IMG/VR virus record: IMGVR_UViG_3300034682_000176
Location: 124,001-188,000 of that record
Strand: one strand, 5' to 3'
DNA length: 64,000 nt
Positions 3,025-54,088 of this stretch are shown here, in pieces; position 1 is the stretch's first letter; every line of letters begins with the position of its first letter. Under the pieces are notes generated by a model. It saw only the letters and a program-made list of their open reading frames with translations, was not told the DNA's origin and searched no databases. The translations under genes were made by a program, and so were the position numbers.

Positions 3025-3027
3025 ACC

Positions 3028-3064
3028 AGACCATCACCGATTGAAAAATCGGTGGTGGTCTTTT
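3028..3064 (+). terminator. intrinsic terminator
   Basis: agaccatcaccgatt-gaaa-aatcggtggtggtct followed by T-run. Confidence 0.8.
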
Positions 3065-3105
3065 CACGCTTTCAGTAATTTCAGTGACTTTGATGAAAAG
3101 TTAAC

Positions 3106-3123
3106 TACACATATACAAAGTGT
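3106..3123 (+). promoter_or_regulatory. putative early promoter motif YACAYATATA-N4-RYGW
   Basis: tacacatata-caaa-gtgt; motif recurs upstream of at least 9 genes. Confidence 0.65.
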
Positions 3124-3156
3124 AATCCCCTCTGTTTACCTAAGGAGTTTAAGACC

Positions 3157-11511: not shown

Positions 11512-13665
11512 ATGTCCGTTGAATTGCTGCTGGGTACCAAGTCTGTCCTGCCCGAAACCCCTGTGTCCACTCTGGCCAAGAAAGCCAGCGCCGTGGTGTC
11601 GGCCCGCACTCTGAGCGACAAAAACGTCACGGCTTTGGCCCTGTCGACCGAGTCCTACGGTGACGAAGCCGCCACGGCTCTGACCAACACCTACAACTCG
11701 TTCGAGGCTGCCCTGAAGACCATGGTCAAGGACCTGGGCATCTCCGCCGAATCCTGGCAGATGACTGCTGCGACCATCGGTGGCATGATGGCTGCTGACC
11801 CTGCCGGCGCCCTGTCCGCCAAGATTCGTCCTGTCACAGCCGACACCGTGCTGCTGAACCCCGGCGTGAACGGCGGTTCGATGGAACGTGCTGCCGCCAT
11901 CGAAGCCTACGACGAGCGTGACAACCGCAACTCGCAGATGCACACCGTGGTGTACAACCTGCTGGCTTCGCGCATGGACGACTTCGCCGAAACCCTGTTC
12001 CCCACCATCGTGGCTTCGCCCAACGAAATGGGTGTGACCGTGGCGCTGAAGTTCTTCTACGTGTACAACGACTTCAAGCGCGCTACCACCGGCTCCCTGG
12101 CCAACTACAACCGCAAGAACGTGATGCGTGCGGCCAAGGACATGTCGATCCTGAAGAACGAGCTGACACGCGCTATCCCTGTGCTGCGCACCGGCGGCGA
12201 CGACAAGAACGACGACAAGTTCGTGCCTATCGCCGTGGGTCCTGCCTGGAACGAAGACCTGGGCGTGGGCGTGTCCGTGCAAACCGGCTGGCTGAAGGTT
12301 GACACCAAGGTCGACCTGCTGGGCCTGTCGCAGACCAACGAACTGCTGGCTTCCGGCATCATGGGTCCCACCGACGCGCTGGACAGCTACATGAAGCTGA
12401 ACGCCGTGCTGGTGCGTGTGACCGACGGTACCAACACCGACGTGTTCCAGATCGACCTGTCGACCAACCCCGCAGCGACGCTGACCTACGCTCCTACTGG
12501 CAACTATCGCAAGATGCTGCTGGCCATGGACTCCGACAGCATCGTGCTGACCGACAAGACCACACAGCTGAACGGCCAACCTCTGGTCCTGCTGGACGAG
12601 CTGGCTACCCACAAGGCCCGCGTGCAGCTGAACATCAACGGCAACGTGCTGCTGGACAAGGGCGACACCATCGTCAACCGTGGTTCGCTGCAACTGACAA
12701 CGCTGCGCAACGCCTCTGGCAACCTGGTGACCGGTTCGGTGTTCGACACCCTGGCCGAGAAGATCGCTTCTGCCGAAGTGATCGGCTACAAGCTGGATAC
12801 ATGGCGTGCCAACAGCAACTTGCGTCAACGTGGCCAGCTGATGGACACGCAGATCGAGTACCGCGTGATTCCTGTGCCTTTCCGTTCGCCTATCGGCGTG
12901 CTGGCTCCCGCCGGCCGCGCTGCTGGTGAAGACACCCAGCCTCTGCAGACCCTGGTGAGCACCACCGGTCGCCGCATGACCAACGAAGCCATCCTGACCC
13001 TGCAAAAGTGGGAAAAGGACATGGAAGCCTACCAAGCTGTGGCTGACGCTTCCGGCACCCTGCCCGAAATGGCCGCCATCGGCAGCGCTTACGTGATCCC
13101 TGCGTTCATGCGCGAAGAAGCCAACCTGCCTCTGACCGTGGACAGCCTGAAGTCGCACGAGCGCTTCAAAGACATCCGTGGCGCTCTGATCGAGAAGATC
13201 CGCTTCCTGGCCAACGAACTGCAACGCCGTTCCGAGTACCAGGCTGTGGCCGCGTTCTTGATGAACAACCCCAACTTCAAGCCTACCGTGATCGTGGCAA
13301 CCGATCCCGTGATCCACAACTACCTGTCCATGGACGGTGACCTGCGTCTGCTGGGTGACTCGTTCGACGTGAAGGTGGTGTCCACGATCGCTCAACCGAT
13401 CGAGAACAAGATCTACGTGACCTTCGGTGTGTTCGACCAACAGCGCAACACCACGGTGAACCCCCTGAACTCGGGCAACACCCTGTACACGCCTGAACTG
13501 GTGCTGAACCTGCCGATCAGCCGCGATGGCCAGCACTCCAACGAACTGACGGTGACTCCTCGTTTCATCCAGTTCTTCAACCTGCCTGTGCTGGGCGTGA
13601 TCAACGTCCGCGGCCTGCCTGCTGTCACCAACAAGCAAGCTGTGCACACCAAGGAAATCGTCTAA
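11512..13665 (+). CDS. major capsid protein (phiKZ gp120-like)
   Basis: 717 aa; extreme codon bias typical of high expression; F-ETLFPTIV, NSNLRQRGQL and VIVATDPVI motifs; S/A-X-E head-protease-type sites in the N-terminus; double hairpin downstream. Confidence 0.9.
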   Translation: MSVELLLGTKSVLPETPVSTLAKKASAVVSARTLSDKNVTALALSTESYGDEAATALTNTYNSFEAALKTMVKDLGISAESWQMTAATIGGMMAADPAGALSAKIRPVTADTVLLNPGVNGGSMERAAAIEAYDERDNRNSQMHTVVYNLLASRMDDFAETLFPTIVASPNEMGVTVALKFFYVYNDFKRATTGSLANYNRKNVMRAAKDMSILKNELTRAIPVLRTGGDDKNDDKFVPIAVGPAWNEDLGVGVSVQTGWLKVDTKVDLLGLSQTNELLASGIMGPTDALDSYMKLNAVLVRVTDGTNTDVFQIDLSTNPAATLTYAPTGNYRKMLLAMDSDSIVLTDKTTQLNGQPLVLLDELATHKARVQLNINGNVLLDKGDTIVNRGSLQLTTLRNASGNLVTGSVFDTLAEKIASAEVIGYKLDTWRANSNLRQRGQLMDTQIEYRVIPVPFRSPIGVLAPAGRAAGEDTQPLQTLVSTTGRRMTNEAILTLQKWEKDMEAYQAVADASGTLPEMAAIGSAYVIPAFMREEANLPLTVDSLKSHERFKDIRGALIEKIRFLANELQRRSEYQAVAAFLMNNPNFKPTVIVATDPVIHNYLSMDGDLRLLGDSFDVKVVSTIAQPIENKIYVTFGVFDQQRNTTVNPLNSGNTLYTPELVLNLPISRDGQHSNELTVTPRFIQFFNLPVLGVINVRGLPAVTNKQAVHTKEIV

Positions 13666-13677
13666 TTAGGCGATGCG

Positions 13678-13756
13678 CTAGGGAGTCTGACTCCCTAGTT
13701 CTCCTATACCCCACCCTGGCGGCCTTCGGGCTTGCCAGGGTGGGGTATGTATTTTT
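13678..13756 (+). terminator. double hairpin terminator after the capsid gene
   Basis: ctagggagtc/gactccctag and ataccccaccctggc...gccagggtggggtat plus T-run. Confidence 0.75.
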
Positions 13757-13782
13757 GCAAGTGCTTTTGAAGTCGGCACAGG

Positions 13783-13800
13783 TACATATATACCTAGTGA
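13783..13800 (+). promoter_or_regulatory. putative early promoter motif
   Basis: tacatatata-ccta-gtga, upstream of the operon containing the nvRNAP subunit. Confidence 0.65.
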
Positions 13801-13832
13801 TTTGTATCTCTGCGTATCTCTAGGAGTTCCTT

Positions 13833-33729: not shown

Positions 33730-33747
33730 GCTTGGTTAGTACTTGAC

Positions 33748-33784
33748 TCCCTACCCTGCTGTGCGAAAGCCAGCAGGGTAGGGA
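33748..33784 (+). terminator. hairpin terminator
   Basis: tccctaccctgctg / cagcagggtaggga. Confidence 0.7.
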
Positions 33785-33812
33785 TGTCTTGTGCATTTGT
33801 TGTTTTTTGAAC

Positions 33813-33830
33813 TACACATATACACAGTGA
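33813..33830 (+). promoter_or_regulatory. putative early promoter motif
   Basis: tacacatata-caca-gtga. Confidence 0.65.
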
Positions 33831-33863
33831 TAACAACTGTGTACTGTAAAAAGGAGTTTCACA

Positions 33864-47740: not shown

Positions 47741-47901
47741 ACCACGTTTGTGGCTGTATAGACCATGAAAACCTTGAGTGTCCAGCCATCACCACCGCCT
47801 CCCGATATGGGTAGGCGGTGGTGATATTTGTTTCATAGGTCTTTATATGCGGTGACTGTCTAACGCTGTACAGACCCCTTTTCCACTTTTGAAAGATTGT
47901 T

Positions 47902-49113: not shown

Positions 49114-50736
49114 TTATGCCGTCATGAAAGCCAAAGTGGCATCCAAGATGTCGGTGCTGTTGCTGAAACGGATCTTGCGTTCGTTGTCCAGGTAGTAGGC
49201 TTTGTTTTTCAAAAGCTTGCGCACCTCTTCGATGGCTTCGTCCGACAGCACAGCTTGCAGCGACATGGTGTCACCGTCAAAGTCAGCACCTAGCAAAGCC
49301 ATGTGAGACTGGTGAACGATCAAGCCGTTCACAAATGTGCTGTCCTTGTCGGGGAAGCTATGAAGCACTTCATCCGTGGGGTTCCACTGTTCATCCAGCT
49401 CCCGCACTTGCTTGTACTTGACTGTGGTGAACAGCTTCATGAACGCCGGGTAGATACCACCATAACCCTGGATGGGGTAGCGGGTCACAAACCCTGGCAA
49501 CTTGCCGGACAAGCGCGCCACACTCAGGTACAGCAGTTCCGTCATGGTGATCGGGGCTACGTGCTTTTTGTCCAAGTGTGCTGGCAGGTCACGGATGTCC
49601 TGGAAGAACTTCACGTACTTGCCGTCGTTGTACAGCAGTCCCATGCAGTGCTTGGAGCGGTTGGTAAACACGGGCAGGTGACGAGTGTCTTGCCGTGCGA
49701 AGTTGGCAATCACGGTCTCCAAGCCGTCGGTGGTCATCCAGCGATCGTAGTCCTTTTGGACGTGGCTGTTGAGGACTTCTTCCTTTTGCCAGGTCTTGAG
49801 GTTGGTCATGTAGGCAAAGGTGTTGTTCTCGCTGAACACCTGTTGCACATAACGGGTACGGATCTCGAACAACGTCTTAGGAGACGCGGCACGCAAGAAC
49901 TGGTGCAGACCGACACCGATGTCGTTCATACAGACCCGGTTGGGGTCAGAGATGTGGGTGGGCTCGTTGACCGAAGCCGTGATCACGTTTCGGGTCGAGT
50001 TGAACGTCTTGCGACTGAGCCACTTCCCCAGGATCAGTTTGTGCTTGCCTTCCAGCAGGCTTTGGATGTAGTCGTACAGCTCCAGAATACTCTTTTGCAG
50101 GTTGCTGTAGACATTGTCGTAGGAGTAAGGTGTGCGTCGTGCGATGTCGGCATCCACCAGCTGAGACTGCGCAAGGATGCGGCGGTAGAAGGTGTTGACT
50201 TCATCTTCTTCCGGCTTACCGTTCGGGCTGATGGTGTAGTCCCGCAAACCGGCCGGCATGACCAACATGTAGCGCAGCAAGTGCTTGTCCTCACCGACGG
50301 CCTTGTTGAAGAACTTGATGTTCTCGGTACGCTTGTCTGAAGCATTGGACTCAAAGCTCAAATCCGCCACGTGCTTCAAAAAGAACGTGTAGCCAGTTTG
50401 TGCGGTGGGTTCGTTGCTCTTTTCAAACTGACGCAGTTTGGGATTCCAGATGGCGGAGATCGAGCCATCCATGATGCCTTTGTAAAAAGACTTCAAGGTG
50501 ATGATGGTCTTGTACACCAAGGGGTGCAAGATGGGGTAGCGCAGATCGATGTAGCCAAACATGCGGGTGCGATGCTCGCTGCCAATCGGACCAAAGATCT
50601 GGGTCGAGAACAAACCATCTTGGTGGAAGTTGCTACCCTGACCAAAGATCTGCAGCTCCTTGATCTGACCCAAGCGCGATAGGTCAGAATCCTTGACACG
50701 CAACAGCGCGATGTTAACCGGTGGGAGTGAAGACAT
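49114..50736 (-). CDS. virion RNA polymerase beta'-like catalytic subunit (phiKZ gp180-like)
   Basis: NFHQDGLFS-QIFG-IGS, RNVIT, VTRYP and GADFDGD catalytic motif. Confidence 0.88.
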   Translation of the reverse strand: MSSLPPVNIALLRVKDSDLSRLGQIKELQIFGQGSNFHQDGLFSTQIFGPIGSEHRTRMFGYIDLRYPILHPLVYKTIITLKSFYKGIMDGSISAIWNPKLRQFEKSNEPTAQTGYTFFLKHVADLSFESNASDKRTENIKFFNKAVGEDKHLLRYMLVMPAGLRDYTISPNGKPEEDEVNTFYRRILAQSQLVDADIARRTPYSYDNVYSNLQKSILELYDYIQSLLEGKHKLILGKWLSRKTFNSTRNVITASVNEPTHISDPNRVCMNDIGVGLHQFLRAASPKTLFEIRTRYVQQVFSENNTFAYMTNLKTWQKEEVLNSHVQKDYDRWMTTDGLETVIANFARQDTRHLPVFTNRSKHCMGLLYNDGKYVKFFQDIRDLPAHLDKKHVAPITMTELLYLSVARLSGKLPGFVTRYPIQGYGGIYPAFMKLFTTVKYKQVRELDEQWNPTDEVLHSFPDKDSTFVNGLIVHQSHMALLGADFDGDTMSLQAVLSDEAIEEVRKLLKNKAYYLDNERKIRFSNSTDILDATLAFMTA

Positions 50737-50880
50737 GTCGAAGCTCTCAAGATAGGATTAAAGGGTTCACAAAATCTAACCGACAGTGTGGTAAGACAAG
50801 TCAGGACTTGTCGAAGTGCTATTGTTTTTTCAAAATTATTGTACCTCTATGATGGGAGACTCGTTTGACCTGTATTTGGT

Positions 50881-50898
50881 TACATATATAGATCACGA
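50881..50898 (+). promoter_or_regulatory. putative early promoter motif driving the repeat-protein operon
   Basis: tacatatata-gatc-acga. Confidence 0.65.
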
Positions 50899-50940
50899 TG
50901 CGTACTGTCAACCACAACCTTTCACGGAAGGAACCTCTCT

Positions 50941-51120
50941 ATGTCTTCTACCACCACCGTCCCAGCCGCTTCCGGCTCTCAAGCGCTCAGCGCCTACGAA
51001 ACCCTCTACCAACTCCATGTAGAGAAACCGCAACCTTCAGCGGAACCCAAAAACGTTGCGGCGACCCAACAGCCGCGCGCCGTCCTGCGTCGTCGCTATC
51101 GTCGTACGGTGACCCGCTAA
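50941..51120 (+). CDS. 59-aa peptide with Arg-rich C-terminus (not in the ORF track)
   Basis: SD aagga; MSSTTTVPAASGSQALSAYETLYQLHVEKPQPSAEPKNVAATQQPRAVLRRRYRRTVTR*. Confidence 0.65.
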   Translation: MSSTTTVPAASGSQALSAYETLYQLHVEKPQPSAEPKNVAATQQPRAVLRRRYRRTVTR

Positions 51121-51145
51121 TTCCTGGGGATGTAATTCCTATAGC

Positions 51146-51351
51146 AACATAACCTATCAGTAAGCCTCAGGACTCTTGTCCGGGCTGTGATATCACGCTG
51201 CGTTTAACACGCAGACCACATTGACAGTACGCGCACCGGGGTGCTTGACTCTTACGCAGGTCTGCACCCCACCCATCACAATCGAGCATCCGTATAGCGA
51301 CTATGTCGGTCGTCGGAGTCTAGGTTGTTTCACTGTTTAGAGGGCAGTGAG
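51146..51351 (+). ncRNA. candidate structured RNA or leader
   Basis: nested stems aaccta/taggtt, agcc-ggac/gtcc-ggct, tgtgat/atcaca, ctgcgt/acgcag, ggggtgc/gcacccc, tccg-cgac/gtcg-cgga, tcactg/cagtga. Confidence 0.5.
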
Positions 51352-51378
51352 CCGTTAGTAACAAAAAGGAGTATCAAC

Positions 51379-52137
51379 GTGAGAGCACCGGTTAATCAAG
51401 AGCTGATTAAAAGCTATCATCAATTCAACACCAAGAACGTGCCGCTGAGCGTGTTCTTGATGCGTGTCAACAATCTGCGCTGGGACGTCAAAAGAGCTGG
51501 CGAAACCCCTTACGTACCACGAACGGGCGGGCTTGTTGCACAATACAAAGAACTCTACGATCGCATCGAATCTCCAACTGTGGGGTTCGATGTGTTCTGC
51601 CGCCGAATGCGCAACGGCCGTGATGTCGAAGAAGCAGCCAAAGCTCCGAAGATTGAACCTTCTGAGCTGTACAGCTACTACCACCAATACCAAGACAAAC
51701 CAGCGGTAGGGTACACCACCTTCTTTAACCGCGTGGTGTCTTTGAATTGGGAGCGCATCAAAGCCATCACCACACCACCGACGCGCAAAATGAAACCGCG
51801 CAAAGAGGTACGTTCCAACACGTACCTGGCCATGTGGTTCAACAAAAACATTGAACGCGCCAAAGTCGATTGGAGCTGTTTTTCCCAACGTGTCTTCAAA
51901 GGCGGGTGGGACAAAGAAAGAGCTCTGACGACACCTTCCATGGCCGAGAATGAATCTCAGCTGCGCGCCTTCTACAACCAACACCCTGACTGTCCAGTCA
52001 ACTACATGACGTTCCACCGTCGTGTGTATGCCCTGGGGTGGGATATGCAGCGTGCAATCTCTACCCCAGTTCGTGACAACACCCGTTCGCAGCGTGAGCG
52101 CGTCGTTGTGAGTTCCCGACCATCCAAGTACAACTAA
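51379..52137 (+). CDS. HTH-like repeat protein (5 repeats)
   Basis: SD aaggag plus GTG; five F--RV---(G)W----A-(T)TP units. Confidence 0.85.
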   Translation: MRAPVNQELIKSYHQFNTKNVPLSVFLMRVNNLRWDVKRAGETPYVPRTGGLVAQYKELYDRIESPTVGFDVFCRRMRNGRDVEEAAKAPKIEPSELYSYYHQYQDKPAVGYTTFFNRVVSLNWERIKAITTPPTRKMKPRKEVRSNTYLAMWFNKNIERAKVDWSCFSQRVFKGGWDKERALTTPSMAENESQLRAFYNQHPDCPVNYMTFHRRVYALGWDMQRAISTPVRDNTRSQRERVVVSSRPSKYN

Positions 52138-52160
52138 TCCACCCCGTAAAGCGTATAGTC

Positions 52161-52628
52161 ATGACCACTACTTTGCGTATTTTGAAGACCGCTCCTTACA
52201 TCACACCCATCGAACAACTGTTGCGTGAGTATCAAGAATTTGCCAACCTGAGTCTTCCCAAAGACGTCTACATCAGCCGTGGTGGTGTTCAAGCCAAAAC
52301 ACCTCAGTTGAGTGCTGCCAGCTACATCCCTGACAGTCTGGAAGACCGTTCGCTACTCAAGCAGTTTGAACAGATCGAAGGACGTGTCGTAGATTTTGGC
52401 ACCTTCCGCCGCCGTGTGCGCGGCGGTATGGAAACCATGCCAGCAGCCAAGACTCCGCTGCGCAAACGCAATCGTTCGTCCTACCAGAGCCACAACAAAA
52501 GTGGCATTCGTCTGGCGTACGAGCATGCTCCATCGACTCCGGCCGTTCCATTCAGCACGTACTACGTGCGTGTGAAAGTGCTGAGCTGGCCTATCCAAAA
52601 AGCTCTGTACACCCCTTTGCATCATTGA
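52161..52628 (+). CDS. HTH-like repeat protein (2 repeats)
   Basis: VDFGTFRRRVRGG...AAKTP and VPFSTYYVRVKVLSW--QKALYTP. Confidence 0.8.
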   Translation: MTTTLRILKTAPYITPIEQLLREYQEFANLSLPKDVYISRGGVQAKTPQLSAASYIPDSLEDRSLLKQFEQIEGRVVDFGTFRRRVRGGMETMPAAKTPLRKRNRSSYQSHNKSGIRLAYEHAPSTPAVPFSTYYVRVKVLSWPIQKALYTPLHH

Positions 52629-52644
52629 CCCCTTTGTTTTTGAA

Positions 52645-52992
52645 ATGAGTATGTTGGACCAACCCACACCACAAATCGACAAGACCACTTTTAAGTCTCC
52701 GAAAGACATTCGGGAACAACTGGAGCAAATCTATCGTGACCATCCCAATCCACCGATTCCATACTCGGTGTTTTACTCGCGTGTGCAGTACCTGGGTTGG
52801 GACGTCATCAGTGCGTTGACCACGGCCATTGCCAAGGAGTTCAGCCATCGCCCACGTGGCGAGATCCGTCAGTTCTACGACGACAATGTAGCGCGCGCTC
52901 AAGTCAACCTGAACGTATACAACGGTCGGGTGCGTATGGGTGGTTGGGACAAAGAAAAAGCGTTGACGACACCTGTTGGCGCTCGTGCTTGA
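52645..52992 (+). CDS. HTH-like repeat protein (2 repeats)
   Basis: IPYSVFYSRVQYLGWD...ALTT and VNLNVYNGRVRMGGWDKEKALTTP. Confidence 0.8.
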   Translation: MSMLDQPTPQIDKTTFKSPKDIREQLEQIYRDHPNPPIPYSVFYSRVQYLGWDVISALTTAIAKEFSHRPRGEIRQFYDDNVARAQVNLNVYNGRVRMGGWDKEKALTTPVGARA

Positions 52993-53010
52993 TATAAAAA
53001 GGAGTTTCAG

Positions 53011-54012
53011 ATGAGTCAGAAAAAACCATCTCAGTACAACCGTGATGAGTTGATCAACTACTACAACAAAGTAGACAACCCAGCGGTACCGCTGGGTCGC
53101 TTCTTGCAACGGGTCAGCCAAAGCGGCTGGACCTTGGAGCGTGCAGCCACTGCTACGGCTTACCGCAGCGGTGGTACTGCCCACCGCTGTACCGAGTACT
53201 ACAACGCAGTTCCTCCAGAGGAGCGCGGTGTGACGTTCGATACGTTCTACAGCCGTGTGATGCGGGGGTGGGACATGCACCGCGCTGCCCGTGAAAAGCC
53301 ACGGGAAAAAGCAGCACCCTACCGTGAGTTCTACGACAAACACCCCAACCCCCAAGTGGACTTCGCCATTTTTTATGTGCGGGTCCACTCCAACAATTGG
53401 GAACTAGAGCGCGCCATTACCACACCGGTCGTACCTATGGCCGATGGTCGTGACTGGTGCCAGGAACGGGTGTTCTACGAAGCCAACCGCCATCGCGCCA
53501 AGGTTGATCTGGCCTTGTTCCACAACCGCGTGAAAATGCGCAAGTGGGACATGGAAACTGCATTGGTCACACCGAAGCGTGACAGCGCAACGCGAAACGA
53601 AAGCCTGCGCAGCTACTTTGACAACCACCCCAATCCACAAGTCAGCTACAAGACTTTTGTCAGCCGTGCGGGTCGTGGTGGTTGGACCAAAGAGTCAGCC
53701 ATCACAGCCCAGCCACGTCCAGTGACAGCCCGTCGTAACGGCGCCAAGTCGGACATGCCTTTGACACCTCGTCAGCAACGCTTTGCCGATGCGCGGGAGT
53801 TCTTCAAAGAGCACAAGGACTTGGCGGTTGTGGATGTGCAAACGTTCTTGCGTCGTGTGTGTTCAGACAACTGGGACCCAATGCAGGCCATCACTACCGA
53901 ACTGGCGGACACCAAACCCACACGGGCTGAAACTGGTGCAATGACCAATTCGTTGCAATCGGCATTCATGAACTTCTGTCGTCCGGCTGTGTCGTCATCA
54001 GCTCACTCATAA
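53011..54012 (+). CDS. HTH-like repeat protein (6 repeats)
   Basis: SD aaggag; six repeat units. Confidence 0.85.
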   Translation: MSQKKPSQYNRDELINYYNKVDNPAVPLGRFLQRVSQSGWTLERAATATAYRSGGTAHRCTEYYNAVPPEERGVTFDTFYSRVMRGWDMHRAAREKPREKAAPYREFYDKHPNPQVDFAIFYVRVHSNNWELERAITTPVVPMADGRDWCQERVFYEANRHRAKVDLALFHNRVKMRKWDMETALVTPKRDSATRNESLRSYFDNHPNPQVSYKTFVSRAGRGGWTKESAITAQPRPVTARRNGAKSDMPLTPRQQRFADAREFFKEHKDLAVVDVQTFLRRVCSDNWDPMQAITTELADTKPTRAETGAMTNSLQSAFMNFCRPAVSSSAHS

Positions 54013-54021
54013 TTGACTGTC

Positions 54022-54058
54022 AGCCATCTAAGCGTCCTCACGGATGCTTAGATGGTTT
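54022..54058 (+). terminator. terminator closing the repeat operon
   Basis: agccatctaagcgtcc-tcac-ggatgcttagatggtt. Confidence 0.7.
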
Positions 54059-54088
54059 GATGTCACATTTGACTAAGGGGTATTTTTT

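What the first reader, a model, noticed from the sequence alone, without database searches (positions are those of the whole stretch)
51146..51351. Multi-branched structured RNA candidate upstream of the repeat genes
Seen: closing stem aaccta(51151)/taggtt(51321) encloses a hairpin agcc..ggac-tctt-gtcc..ggct and a stem tgtgat(51186)/atcaca(51275). The latter holds two hairpins, ctgcgt-ttaac-acgcag and ggggtgc...gcacccc. These are followed by tccg..cgac/gtcg..cgga, and a last hairpin tcactg/cagtga lies just before the SD. Seven compatible nested helices in about 200 nt, without the U-tail of the phage's terminators. I do not recognise a known Rfam family.
Basis: partly seen in the sequence, partly recalled or inferred. 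Interest (0 to 1): 0.7.

Follow-up and report, generated by a model that had tools for sequence, protein, structure and literature searches.

The report
Structured leader-spacer RNA of phage operon
A 258-base gap between two genes of an uncultured giant phage folds into RNA hairpins that are kept in related phages and pairs with the start of its own transcript; it looks like a real regulatory RNA, but it is found in only a few phage lineages and its job is not yet known.

Summary
The window lies in a 224.8-kb phiKZ-like jumbo phage. The finding sits in the 258-nt spacer (51121-51378) between a conserved 59-aa ORF and the first of four paralogous helix-repeat genes. All of these lie downstream of one phage promoter motif (50881-50890).

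The five local hairpins are robust (pair probability 0.67-1.0). H4, H5 and H6 keep pairing through compensatory changes in relatives: 10 of 27 pairs in the 3' half, against 0 of 500 shuffles.

The two "closing stems" are not supported. Their probability is about 0 in the transcript context. Their arms belong to local helices instead (51155-59/51188-92 and 51278-83/51323-28).

The real long-range feature is new. A perfect 12-13-bp helix joins the transcript's 5' leader (50899-50911) to the spacer centre (51221-51233) and encloses the small ORF. It has one U-A to C-G compensatory change in a diverged lineage.

Folding energy alone is modest (z -1.8 to -2.7) and Rfam has no match.

A sister lineage has deleted the small ORF and spacer together, so the unit is dispensable.

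Most likely this is a cis-acting mRNA element that sets stability, processing or expression balance. That mechanism is inferred, not shown.

The parts
50881..50890 (+). Phage promoter motif TACATATATA, presumed virion-RNAP early promoter. The transcript is inferred to start about 50890-50898.
   Evidence: TACA[TC]ATATA occurs 19 times in the genome, all on the + strand, each 40-90 nt before a ribosome-binding site. It fits the AT-rich ~10-nt early-promoter type of RNAP-encoding jumbo phages (PMC7598289). It is conserved in L050, L062 and L052. A contig from one 'RNA-Seq' run begins at 50890.
50899..50911 (+). 5' arm of long-range helix H0
   Evidence: Perfect 12-nt complement of 51221-51232. 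P = 0.97 in the ensemble. Invariant in all close variants while 50891-98 varies. A compensatory change is seen in L062.
50918..50931 (+). Small hairpin that takes in part of the ribosome-binding site of the 59-aa ORF
   Evidence: CCUUU/GAAGG in the window, CCUUUU/AAAAGG in L062, CCUUC/GAAGG in L052. P = 0.41.
50941..51120 (+). 59-aa ORF with a basic C-terminus (RRRYRRTV). It is enclosed by H0.
   Evidence: Conserved at protein level in five lineages (34-71% identity). No Pfam or PHROG family.
51125..51141 (+). Hairpin Ha, just after the stop codon
   Evidence: In the minimum-energy fold, P = 0.76. One wobble-compatible change and one breaking change among variants. Weak support.
51155..51192 (+). 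Extended hairpin H2x + H2 (51155-59/51188-92; 51163-66/51183-86; 51170-73/51178-81)
   Evidence: 51155 T>C and 51192 A>G occur together in the L074 family and in L050, turning U-A into C-G. Two inner H2 pairs change on both sides in L050. Not recognisable in L062 with the covariance model.
51198..51214 (+). Hairpin H4 (6 bp, 5-nt loop)
   Evidence: P = 0.98. In L050 three pairs change and all stay paired, two of them on both sides.
51221..51233 (+). 3' arm of long-range helix H0
   Evidence: See the 5' arm. Its flanks (51216, 51219, 51220, 51233, 51234) vary while the arm does not. 51233 G>A turns a terminal G.U into A-U.
51238..51270 (+). Hairpin H5: 7-bp outer stem, UU internal loop, 4-bp inner stem
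   Evidence: U-A becomes C-G in L069. L062 has the same shape with a different sequence, with 6 of 11 pairs changed on both sides.
51278..51328 (+). Long irregular hairpin H6x + H6 (51278-83/51323-28; 51285-86/51320-21; 51289-92/51314-17; 51298-302/51308-12)
   Evidence: P = 0.76-1.0. Four H6 pairs change on both sides in L062. Wobble-compatible changes at 51300, 51302 and 51317. L062 pairs AAUCG with CGAUU at the H6x position.
51329..51351 (+). Hairpin H7
   Evidence: P = 0.98. Variant changes fall in the loop (51340) or at its closing end (51336, 51342); none fall in the six core stem pairs. The terminal U.G becomes U-A in L050. Not aligned in L062.
51366..51381 (+). Ribosome-binding site AAGGAG and GTG start of the 252-aa gene
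   Evidence: Read from the sequence. The site is mostly unpaired in the ensemble, 0.5-0.7 in three lineages.
51379..54012 (+). Four tandem paralogous genes (252, 155, 115 and 333 aa) built from ~48-aa three-helix repeats.
   Evidence: All four hit phrog_1065, and the last also hits an HNH-endonuclease PHROG. The AlphaFold2 model shows five three-helix modules with no PDB match. Weak HTH leads from the protein atlas.

Best explanation
The finding is the intercistronic part of one phage operon transcript. That transcript runs: promoter, about 10-nt 5' end, 59-aa ORF, 258-nt structured spacer, then the helix-repeat genes.

Shown:
- The spacer RNA forms a row of local hairpins. H5 and H6 are kept by compensatory evolution in three lineages, and H4 and H2x in two.
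- The centre of the spacer (51221-51233) pairs with the 5' leader (50899-50911). This closes the small ORF into a ~330-nt panhandle.

Inferred:
- The module acts in cis and after transcription.
- The 5'-proximal helix shields the 5' end from 5'-end-dependent RNases.
- The hairpins after the ORF act as barriers to 3' exonucleases or as a processing point.
- Together these would give the small-ORF segment its own stability and set the expression ratio between it and the downstream genes.
- The ribosome-binding site of the downstream gene stays open, so the element is not an off-switch for that gene.
For: Transcript context:
- A strand-specific promoter motif occurs 19 times in the genome; one copy lies 50 nt before the small ORF.
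- A 1741-nt contig from an 'RNA-Seq' run starts at 50890 and runs through the spacer.
- The L208-L210 lineage fuses the same promoter and leader directly to the downstream gene.

Long-range helix H0:
- 12 perfect pairs. Only 2 of 2000 random genome positions reach 12 or more, and none of the other 18 promoters does.
- P = 0.97.
- It appears in the minimum-energy and maximum-expected-accuracy folds of all three lineages and in the RNAalifold consensus.
- U-A becomes C-G in L062, and a terminal G.U becomes A-U in other variants.
- The arms are invariant while their flanks vary.

Local hairpins:
- In the 3' half, 96% of cells are paired and 10 of 27 pairs change on both sides. No shuffle of 500 reaches this, and slid controls give at most 1.
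- Six further both-sided changes occur within the window family plus L050.

RNA rather than DNA:
- Several G.U pairs are present.
- z = -2.6, -3.6 and -1.9 on the sense strand against -1.2, -1.8 and -1.65 on the antisense strand.

Other:
- The region is not coding: frame-breaking indels separate the lineages.
- Relatives without the element (L052, L051) also have a stable hairpin directly after the small ORF.
- The ribosome-binding site of the next gene is 0.5-0.7 unpaired.
Against: - No experiment or strand-resolved RNA data exist. The transcript ends are inferred, and the wastewater RNA runs cover the locus evenly and may contain phage DNA.
- Only three independent lineages carry the element. 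The L062 alignment was fitted by a covariance model at 14.5 bits, so the pair counts lean towards the structure.
- Folding energy is ordinary for this genome.
- The 5' half has no energy signal and is not conserved in L062.
- H0 rests on a single compensatory pair.
- The natural deletion shows the phage can do without the whole unit.
- The host and its RNases are unknown.
Confidence: 0.4

Rival explanations
1. Protein-binding operator RNA. The conserved hairpins H5 and H6 and the conserved single-stranded motifs between them (CCACCC, AAUCGA, CCGUAYAG) are the binding site of a phage protein. The candidates are the basic 59-aa product or one of the helix-repeat proteins. Binding would autoregulate translation of the operon, as T4 RegA/gp32 and the MS2 coat protein do.
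For: Unpaired motifs are conserved between the window, L050 and L062. The small protein has an arginine-rich C-terminus. The element sits between the genes that could encode its binder.
Against: L052 and L051 keep both proteins but lack H5 and H6. L208-L210 keep the repeat protein but have neither the element nor the small ORF. The ribosome-binding site is not inside a hairpin. The complex prediction was not run by the tool, so it gives no evidence either way.
Confidence: 0.2
2. Transcription-level element for the phage RNA polymerase. This could be a put-like antiterminator RNA or an attenuator that controls read-through from the small ORF into the repeat genes.
For: It lies in a presumed early operon just downstream of the promoter. 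It has two adjacent irregular stem-loops, H5 and H6x. Relatives L052 and L051 have terminator-like hairpins with U-rich tails at the same place.
Against: There is no U-tailed terminator in or after the element in this phage. No alternative terminator/antiterminator pairing is conserved. Nothing is known about such RNAs for jumbo-phage polymerases.
Confidence: 0.1
3. The signals act in DNA rather than RNA. The inverted 12-mers at 50900 and 51221, and the related direct copy at 51245, would be operator sites for a DNA-binding protein such as the helix-repeat proteins. The matching change in L062 would then be co-evolution of sites with their binder.
For: There are three related TTGAC..TACGC sites. 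The adjacent genes look like multi-HTH proteins. A matching change in two inverted sites fits this reading as well as it fits pairing.
Against: G.U pairs and the strand asymmetry of folding energy point to + strand RNA. H4, H5 and H6 change sequence completely while keeping their pairing, which operator sites would not do. The third site does not follow the L062 change. No inversion or junction reads were seen.
Confidence: 0.07
4. No dedicated function. The spacer would be drifting filler built by local duplications, and its hairpins would be tolerated rather than selected.
For: Energy z is only about -2, ordinary for this genome. Internal direct repeats suggest growth by duplication. The length is very variable among relatives: 81, 145, 258 and 285 nt. 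The whole unit is deleted in one lineage. The 5' half is poorly conserved.
Against: There are sixteen pairs with both-sided compensatory changes and almost no broken pairs. The H0 arms are invariant amid variable flanks. The H5/H6 shape is the same in a lineage whose sequence has diverged beyond ordinary alignment.
Confidence: 0.13
5. A stable, separately acting non-coding RNA, for example a decoy for a host RNA-binding protein or a defence system, or a ribozyme, processed out of the operon transcript.
For: A compact row of three stable hairpins with conserved loops and junctions. No known family matches.
Against: There is no evidence of a discrete RNA species. No internal promoter or terminator was found. 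No ribozyme family matches. Distribution is very narrow.
Confidence: 0.05

Closest known systems
Intercistronic stem-loop stabilisers of polycistronic mRNAs (Rhodobacter puf operon; REP hairpins between malE and malF). From my own knowledge, not tested here.
   Same: Several stable hairpins without U tails sit between a small, presumably highly expressed upstream cistron and the downstream cistrons of one transcript. The expected effect is differential stability of mRNA segments.
   Different: No sequence relation. Here a long-range helix to the 5' leader is added. The phage uses its own RNA polymerases and the host is unknown. No decay data exist.
5'-terminal stem-loop stabilisers (E. coli ompA 5' UTR; B. 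subtilis aprE and ermC leaders). From my own knowledge.
   Same: A helix begins within about 10 nt of the inferred 5' end (50899 against a start at 50890-50898).
   Different: Known stabilisers are local hairpins. Here the partner strand lies 310 nt downstream, beyond a translated ORF. The exact 5' end is not mapped.
Long-range processing stalks that pair the two flanks of a functional unit (RNase III stems flanking 16S and 23S rRNA). From my own knowledge.
   Same: Complementary sequences on both sides of a unit, here the small ORF, pair over hundreds of nucleotides.
   Different: H0 has 12-13 bp (about 17 with bulges in L062), shorter than typical RNase III substrates of about 20 bp. No cleavage evidence exists.
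HK022 put RNA, a cis-acting antiterminator made of two stem-loops in phage early operons. From my own knowledge.
   Same: A cis-encoded structured RNA with adjacent irregular stem-loops shortly downstream of an early promoter.
   Different: put acts on host RNA polymerase and precedes terminators. No terminators follow here, there is no sequence similarity, and the polymerase is a phage multisubunit enzyme.
Hairpins that control translation of homing-endonuclease genes in T4-like phages (review PMC2988022; listed, not read)
   Same: A structured RNA directly upstream of accessory genes that resemble DNA-binding or HNH proteins, in a variable genome island.
   Different: In T4 the hairpin sequesters the ribosome-binding site. 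Here that site is open and the hairpins lie upstream of it.

Membership tests
Any Rfam 15 family (riboswitches, ribozymes, group I/II introns, HEARO, known phage motifs) | Covariance-model score at or above the curated gathering threshold | tested here: not met
   There were no matches at gathering score in the 64-kb window. At E <= 10 in 50700-51500 there were only two chance snoRNA hits. There was nothing in the homologous loci L068, L074 and L070 at E <= 1.
Riboswitch | An expression platform: ligand-dependent terminator or sequestration of the ribosome-binding site | tested here: not met
   There is no terminator-like site in the spacer. The downstream ribosome-binding site is 0.5-0.7 unpaired in three lineages.
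Riboswitch | A ligand-binding aptamer core conserved over wide phylogenetic distance | tested here: not met
   The element was found in only three closely related phage lineages. It is absent from L052, L051 and L208-L210.
Intrinsic terminator | A G+C-rich hairpin followed directly by a U tract | tested here: not met
   The scan found none in 51121-51378. The tails after H5, H6x and H7 are not U-rich.
Retron msr-msd non-coding RNA | Inverted repeats a1/a2 flanking the RNA, and an adjacent reverse transcriptase gene | tested here: not met
   H0 resembles an a1/a2 pair. However, no RVT_1 match exists anywhere in the 224.8-kb genome, while the control genomes do match. A conserved protein-coding ORF also lies between the arms.
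5'-terminal stabiliser helix | A helix starting within a few nucleotides of the 5' end of the mRNA | tested here: inconclusive
   The arm starts at 50899. The start is inferred at 50890-50898 from the promoter motif and from one contig end. No 5' end mapping exists.
5'-terminal stabiliser helix | A longer mRNA half-life that depends on the helix | not testable with these tools
   This needs decay measurements in the unknown host.
RNase III long-range processing stalk | About two helical turns (~20 bp) of double-stranded RNA | tested here: inconclusive
   12-13 bp in the window and in L050. About 17 bp with bulges in L062.
Conserved structured cis-regulatory mRNA element (generic class) | Base pairs maintained by compensatory substitutions in homologues | tested here: met
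   10 of 27 pairs change on both sides in the 3' half, against 0 of 500 shuffles. Six more change within closer relatives. One changes in H0. Caveat: only three lineages, and one alignment was model-fitted.
Conserved structured cis-regulatory mRNA element (generic class) | Lies on the transcribed strand within an mRNA | tested here: inconclusive
   The promoter motif, gene order, the natural promoter fusion and one contig that begins at 50890 all agree. There are no strand-specific expression data.

The most novel reading that the evidence does not exclude
The panhandle (H0) together with the H5-H6 hairpins is a previously undescribed class of jumbo-phage RNA module. It would act beyond simple mRNA stabilisation. 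One possibility is a switch in which translation of the enclosed 59-aa ORF, or binding of its arginine-rich product, remodels the fold and times expression of early genes made by the virion RNA polymerase. Another is an RNA that is processed out and acts on a host factor.
Probability: 0.1. Interest if true: 0.7.

Novelty: new member of a known kind. Interest (0 to 1): 0.45.

Why it matters
RNA-level regulation in phiKZ-like jumbo phages is almost unexplored. These phages transcribe with their own multisubunit polymerases. Transcript maps exist for only a few cultured phages, for example phiKZ and 201phi2-1 (papers listed, not read here).

A conserved structured spacer that pairs with the 5' end of its own mRNA would be a concrete, testable example of post-transcriptional control in an early operon of such a phage.

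It also comes with a useful natural control: a sister lineage in which the small ORF and the structure are cleanly deleted.

The practical reach is limited. The element is confined to a few uncultured lineages and the host is unknown.

Tried and rejected
**Known families**
- Rfam at gathering and at permissive thresholds, on the window and on homologues: nothing.
- tRNA/tmRNA scan: none.
- Sigma-70 promoters and intrinsic terminators in the region: none convincing.

**Searches for relatives**
- blastn against deposited phages: no match.
- The nearest named phage, Bacillus phage AgentSmith (51% RNAP identity), lacks the whole island.
- IMG/VR scans with proteins and DNA patterns gave no relatives of the element.
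- First metagenome pattern scan: 0 hits. The second was too loose: 120 or more loci, of which only L195 is real. The 15.8-bit hit in L101/L141/L204 lies inside a 213-aa ORF and has six broken pairs, so I rejected it as spurious.
- RNAP-based look-ups P0003, P0007, P0008 and P0010 gave contigs without the element.

**Covariance models**
- The model of the 5' half does not find L062.

**RNA reads**
- The contigs cover the locus evenly, with no ends or joints. They are not decisive, and both read-laying runs are used.

**Structural ideas I dropped**
- Anti-SD pairing of 51121-25 with the ribosome-binding site appears only when the spacer is folded alone, not in the transcript.
- Complementarity between the 3' end of the small ORF and H5/H6 is not conserved in L062, so I dropped it.
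- The retron idea is rejected: no reverse transcriptase.
- A coding or pseudogene explanation is rejected because of frame-breaking indels.

**Proteins**
- Protein-RNA complex prediction was not run by the tool and gives no evidence.
- Fold search of the repeat protein against the PDB: no match with E <= 0.001.

**Skipped on purpose**
- I did not send the 495-column structure string to the count of structure pairs, to avoid the repeated-text check. The same counts were made in a script.

Full report
**Context**

The window is bases 124001-188000 of a 224,810-bp IMG/VR phage genome with direct terminal repeats.

It encodes a split multisubunit RNA polymerase subunit of the phiKZ type at 49114-50736 on the - strand (phrog_2986, E 6e-170). 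The nearest named phage is Bacillus phage AgentSmith, at 51% identity for that protein.

In AgentSmith the polymerase gene is directly divergent from the homologue of the 1027-aa virion gene. In the window, 3.35 kb lies between them (50737-54088). This stretch holds:
- a 59-aa ORF (50941-51120);
- a 258-nt non-coding spacer (51121-51378), which contains the finding;
- four tandem paralogues of phrog_1065 (51379-54012).

The island varies among relatives. One lineage has an IS605-type TnpB gene there (L051). Another has an AAA protein and a 192-aa gene (L061/L062).

**Check of the observation**

- The 206-nt stretch folds at -70.5 kcal/mol with z = -2.72.
- The whole spacer gives z = -1.8 to -2.0 on the + strand and -0.6 to -0.85 on the - strand.
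- Among 116 strand-specific folds of this genome's longer spacers, many reach z -5 to -10. Those look like long terminator-type hairpins.

Energy alone therefore says 'somewhat structured, + strand favoured' and nothing more.

The 3' half (51233-51356) carries the signal: z = -2.63, against -1.24 antisense. The 5' half has none, at z = -1.04.

**Known families**

Rfam 15 gives nothing at gathering score in the whole window. At E <= 10 around the site it gives only two chance snoRNA hits. It gives nothing in three homologous loci. There are no tRNAs.

**Transcript context**

The decamer TACA[TC]ATATA occurs 19 times in the genome, always on the + strand. It usually lies 40-90 nt before a ribosome-binding site. 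One copy is at 50881-50890.

This matches what a review describes for RNAP-encoding jumbo phages. It reports a highly conserved AT-rich motif of about 10 nt, centred near -10 of early genes and read by the virion polymerase (PMC7598289). The class assignment here rests on that analogy only.

The motif is conserved before the small ORF in L050, L062 and L052.

One Logan contig from a wastewater run labelled RNA-Seq begins exactly at 50890 and continues for 1741 nt (table 8). This is suggestive. It is not proof, because such libraries can hold DNA. The other RNA runs cover the locus evenly.

I therefore treat the spacer as the intercistronic part of a transcript starting at about 50890-50898.

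**Homologues**

Exact-protein look-ups gave the syntenic locus in these lineages:
- L050 (polymerase 88% identical, spacer 256 nt);
- several near-identical variants of the window (L069/L070, L074-L079, L080/L081, L195);
- L062-L068 (downstream gene 56% identical, spacer 285 nt);
- L052 (spacer 145 nt) and L051 (81 nt).

The small ORF is conserved as a protein in all five lineages (34-71% identity). The spacer is not coding: one- and two-base indels separate the window from L050.

**The local hairpins**

Between the window family and L050:
- H4 changes at three pairs and stays fully paired.
- The inner stem of H2 changes two pairs on both sides.
- H5 shows U-A to C-G in L069.
- Single changes at 51300, 51302, 51317, 51173 and 51244 all give wobble or Watson-Crick pairs.

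A covariance model of the 3' half finds L062 only with filters off (14.5 bits, E 2e-4 in the 701-nt syntenic stretch). It aligns H5 and H6 with no non-standard pair, although the stem sequences differ. The same stems appear in independent minimum-energy folds of L062.

On that alignment, 96% of cells are paired and 10 of 27 pairs change on both sides. None of 500 column shuffles reaches this, and slid controls give 0-1.

Two caveats apply. Only three lineages carry the element, and one row of the alignment was fitted to the model.

The model of the 5' half does not find L062.

H1 (51151-56/51321-26):
- It has P = 0.77 only when the 206-nt fragment is folded alone. P is about 0 in the spacer or transcript.
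- 51155 T>C breaks it in L050 and in the L074 family.
- That same change occurs together with 51192 A>G. The two restore a pair in a local helix, H2x (51155-59/51188-92).
- The 3' arm of H1 instead pairs with 51278-83 to extend H6 (H6x, P = 0.97). L062 has AAUCG/CGAUU at that place.

H3 (51186-91/51275-80):
- It never varies and has P <= 0.12.
- It overlaps H2x.

The RNAalifold consensus of six transcripts contains neither H1 nor H3.

**The new feature: long-range helix H0**

Positions 50900-50911 in the leader are the exact reverse complement of 51221-51232 in the spacer centre.
- Only 2 of 2000 random genome positions show a leader-type complement of 12 or more within 830 nt. None of the other 18 promoters does.
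- The helix has P = 0.97.
- It is in the minimum-energy and maximum-expected-accuracy folds of the window, L050 and L062 and in the alignment consensus.
- In L062 the fourth arm position is C instead of U and its partner is G instead of A. Nine contiguous pairs are kept.
- 51233 G>A in several variants turns the terminal G.U with 50899 into A-U.
- Both arms are invariant in every close variant and in L050, while the flanks change. L195 has four changes in 50891-98, and sites 51216-20 and 51233-34 vary.

H0 encloses the ribosome-binding site, the ORF and the first three spacer hairpins. H5, H6x and H7 follow it directly. After them comes an A-rich stretch and an accessible ribosome-binding site, 0.5-0.7 unpaired.

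**A natural deletion**

A sister lineage of L062 was found in L208-L210. Its downstream gene is 90% identical to that of L062.

In this lineage the promoter and leader, ending ...CACTGTCAAT, are joined straight to the A-rich ribosome-binding site of the repeat gene. The small ORF and the entire spacer, about 480 nt in L062, are missing. The end points share CAAT.

This shows three things:
- The downstream genes use the same promoter.
- The small ORF and the structure behave as one unit.
- That unit is dispensable.

Two formerly paired positions of the 5' arm have changed in this lineage. That would fit relaxed constraint, but the numbers are small.

**Mechanism**

Shown:
- a conserved, + strand-favoured set of RNA helices inside a non-coding spacer;
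- a long-range leader-spacer helix;
- an open downstream ribosome-binding site.

Inferred: the module works in cis on the mRNA. I favour a stability and partition role. A helix near the 5' end would protect against 5'-end-dependent decay. Hairpins after the small ORF would act as barriers to 3' exonucleases or as a processing point. Together they would set the ratio between the small protein and the repeat proteins.

Relatives that lack H0, H5 and H6 still place a strong hairpin right after the small ORF. That fits a common need for structure at that position.

The rivals cannot be separated without experiments. They are a protein-binding operator, a put-like transcription element, DNA operators, neutral filler, and a processed trans-acting RNA. 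The G.U pairs, the strand asymmetry and the complete turnover of stem sequences argue against the DNA and filler readings.

**The neighbouring genes**

The 252-aa protein has no Pfam family. Its AlphaFold2 model (mean pLDDT 76, pTM 0.28) is five three-helix modules with no PDB match at E <= 0.001. Feature-based look-alikes carry HTH families at sub-threshold scores.

About 900 proteins in the representative library match the repeat profile. The proteins are probably nucleic-acid binders, but this is a lead, not a result.

**Verdict**

The region is a genuine candidate for a conserved structured RNA, without a known family. Its architecture differs from the one proposed, and it has a long-range partner outside the reported coordinates.

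It is a new member of the broad, well-known class of structured cis-acting mRNA elements. It is found in a very narrow clade of uncultured phages. Interest is moderate.

Noticed in passing
window 3106, 5383, 13783, 33813, 38072, 40077, 50881 (and 12 more sites in the genome outside the window): A strictly + strand decamer, TACA[TC]ATATA, is often preceded by TTTATTTCAG and followed about 5 nt later by TGA or CGA. It occurs 19 times in the genome and looks like the phage's own (early?) promoter. Downstream genes are mostly of unknown function.
   Followed up: partly
L208:728-968, L209:800-1040, L210:1811-2051 compared with L062:3300-4030: A natural clean deletion of the small ORF plus the structured spacer, about 480 nt between two CAAT tetramers. 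It fuses the promoter and leader directly to the repeat gene.
   Followed up: yes
L051:5457-6686 (- strand of the locus): An IS605-family TnpB gene (OrfB_IS605, Cas12f1-like_TNB) with a structured 3' region lies between the RNA polymerase gene and the small ORF in one relative. Its right end abuts the conserved leader motif GTCAAC.
   Followed up: no
window 50737-54088: The stretch between the RNA polymerase subunit gene and the virion genes is a variable island. It is absent in Bacillus phage AgentSmith and has different cargo in L051, L052, L061/L062 and L071.
   Followed up: partly
window 51379-54012: Four tandem paralogues built from ~48-aa three-helix repeats (phrog_1065). The last also matches an HNH-endonuclease PHROG at residues 165-239. 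About 900 proteins in the 50%-identity library match the repeat profile, some with up to 11 matched stretches.
   Followed up: partly
window 50918-50931; L062, L052 and L051 leaders: A short anti-SD/SD hairpin in front of the small ORF is kept in the five lineages, with changes that preserve pairing (U.G, U-A, C-G).
   Followed up: partly
window 50892-50903 vs 51192-51203; 51135-51148 vs 51288-51301; 50910-50929 vs 51026-51045: Imperfect direct repeats (79-92% identity) link the leader, the small ORF and the spacer. The spacer may have grown by local duplication.
   Followed up: no
window 51286: A contig from one wastewater run matches from 51286 onward but carries 86 unrelated bases before it. 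This may be a recombinant or a differently built spacer in another strain.
   Followed up: no
window 50700-52200 (runs X1-X20): Near-identical sequence turns up in very different sample types: subsurface, soil, wastewater, indoor surface, air and mosquito metatranscriptomes. The phage or its host seems widespread, or it is a common contaminant.
   Followed up: no
window 13648-13832, 33730-33863, 47741-47901, 3025-3156: These spacers fold far better than shuffles (z -4.4 to -8 on one or both strands). They are probably the phage's bidirectional terminator hairpins placed just upstream of promoter motifs.
   Followed up: no
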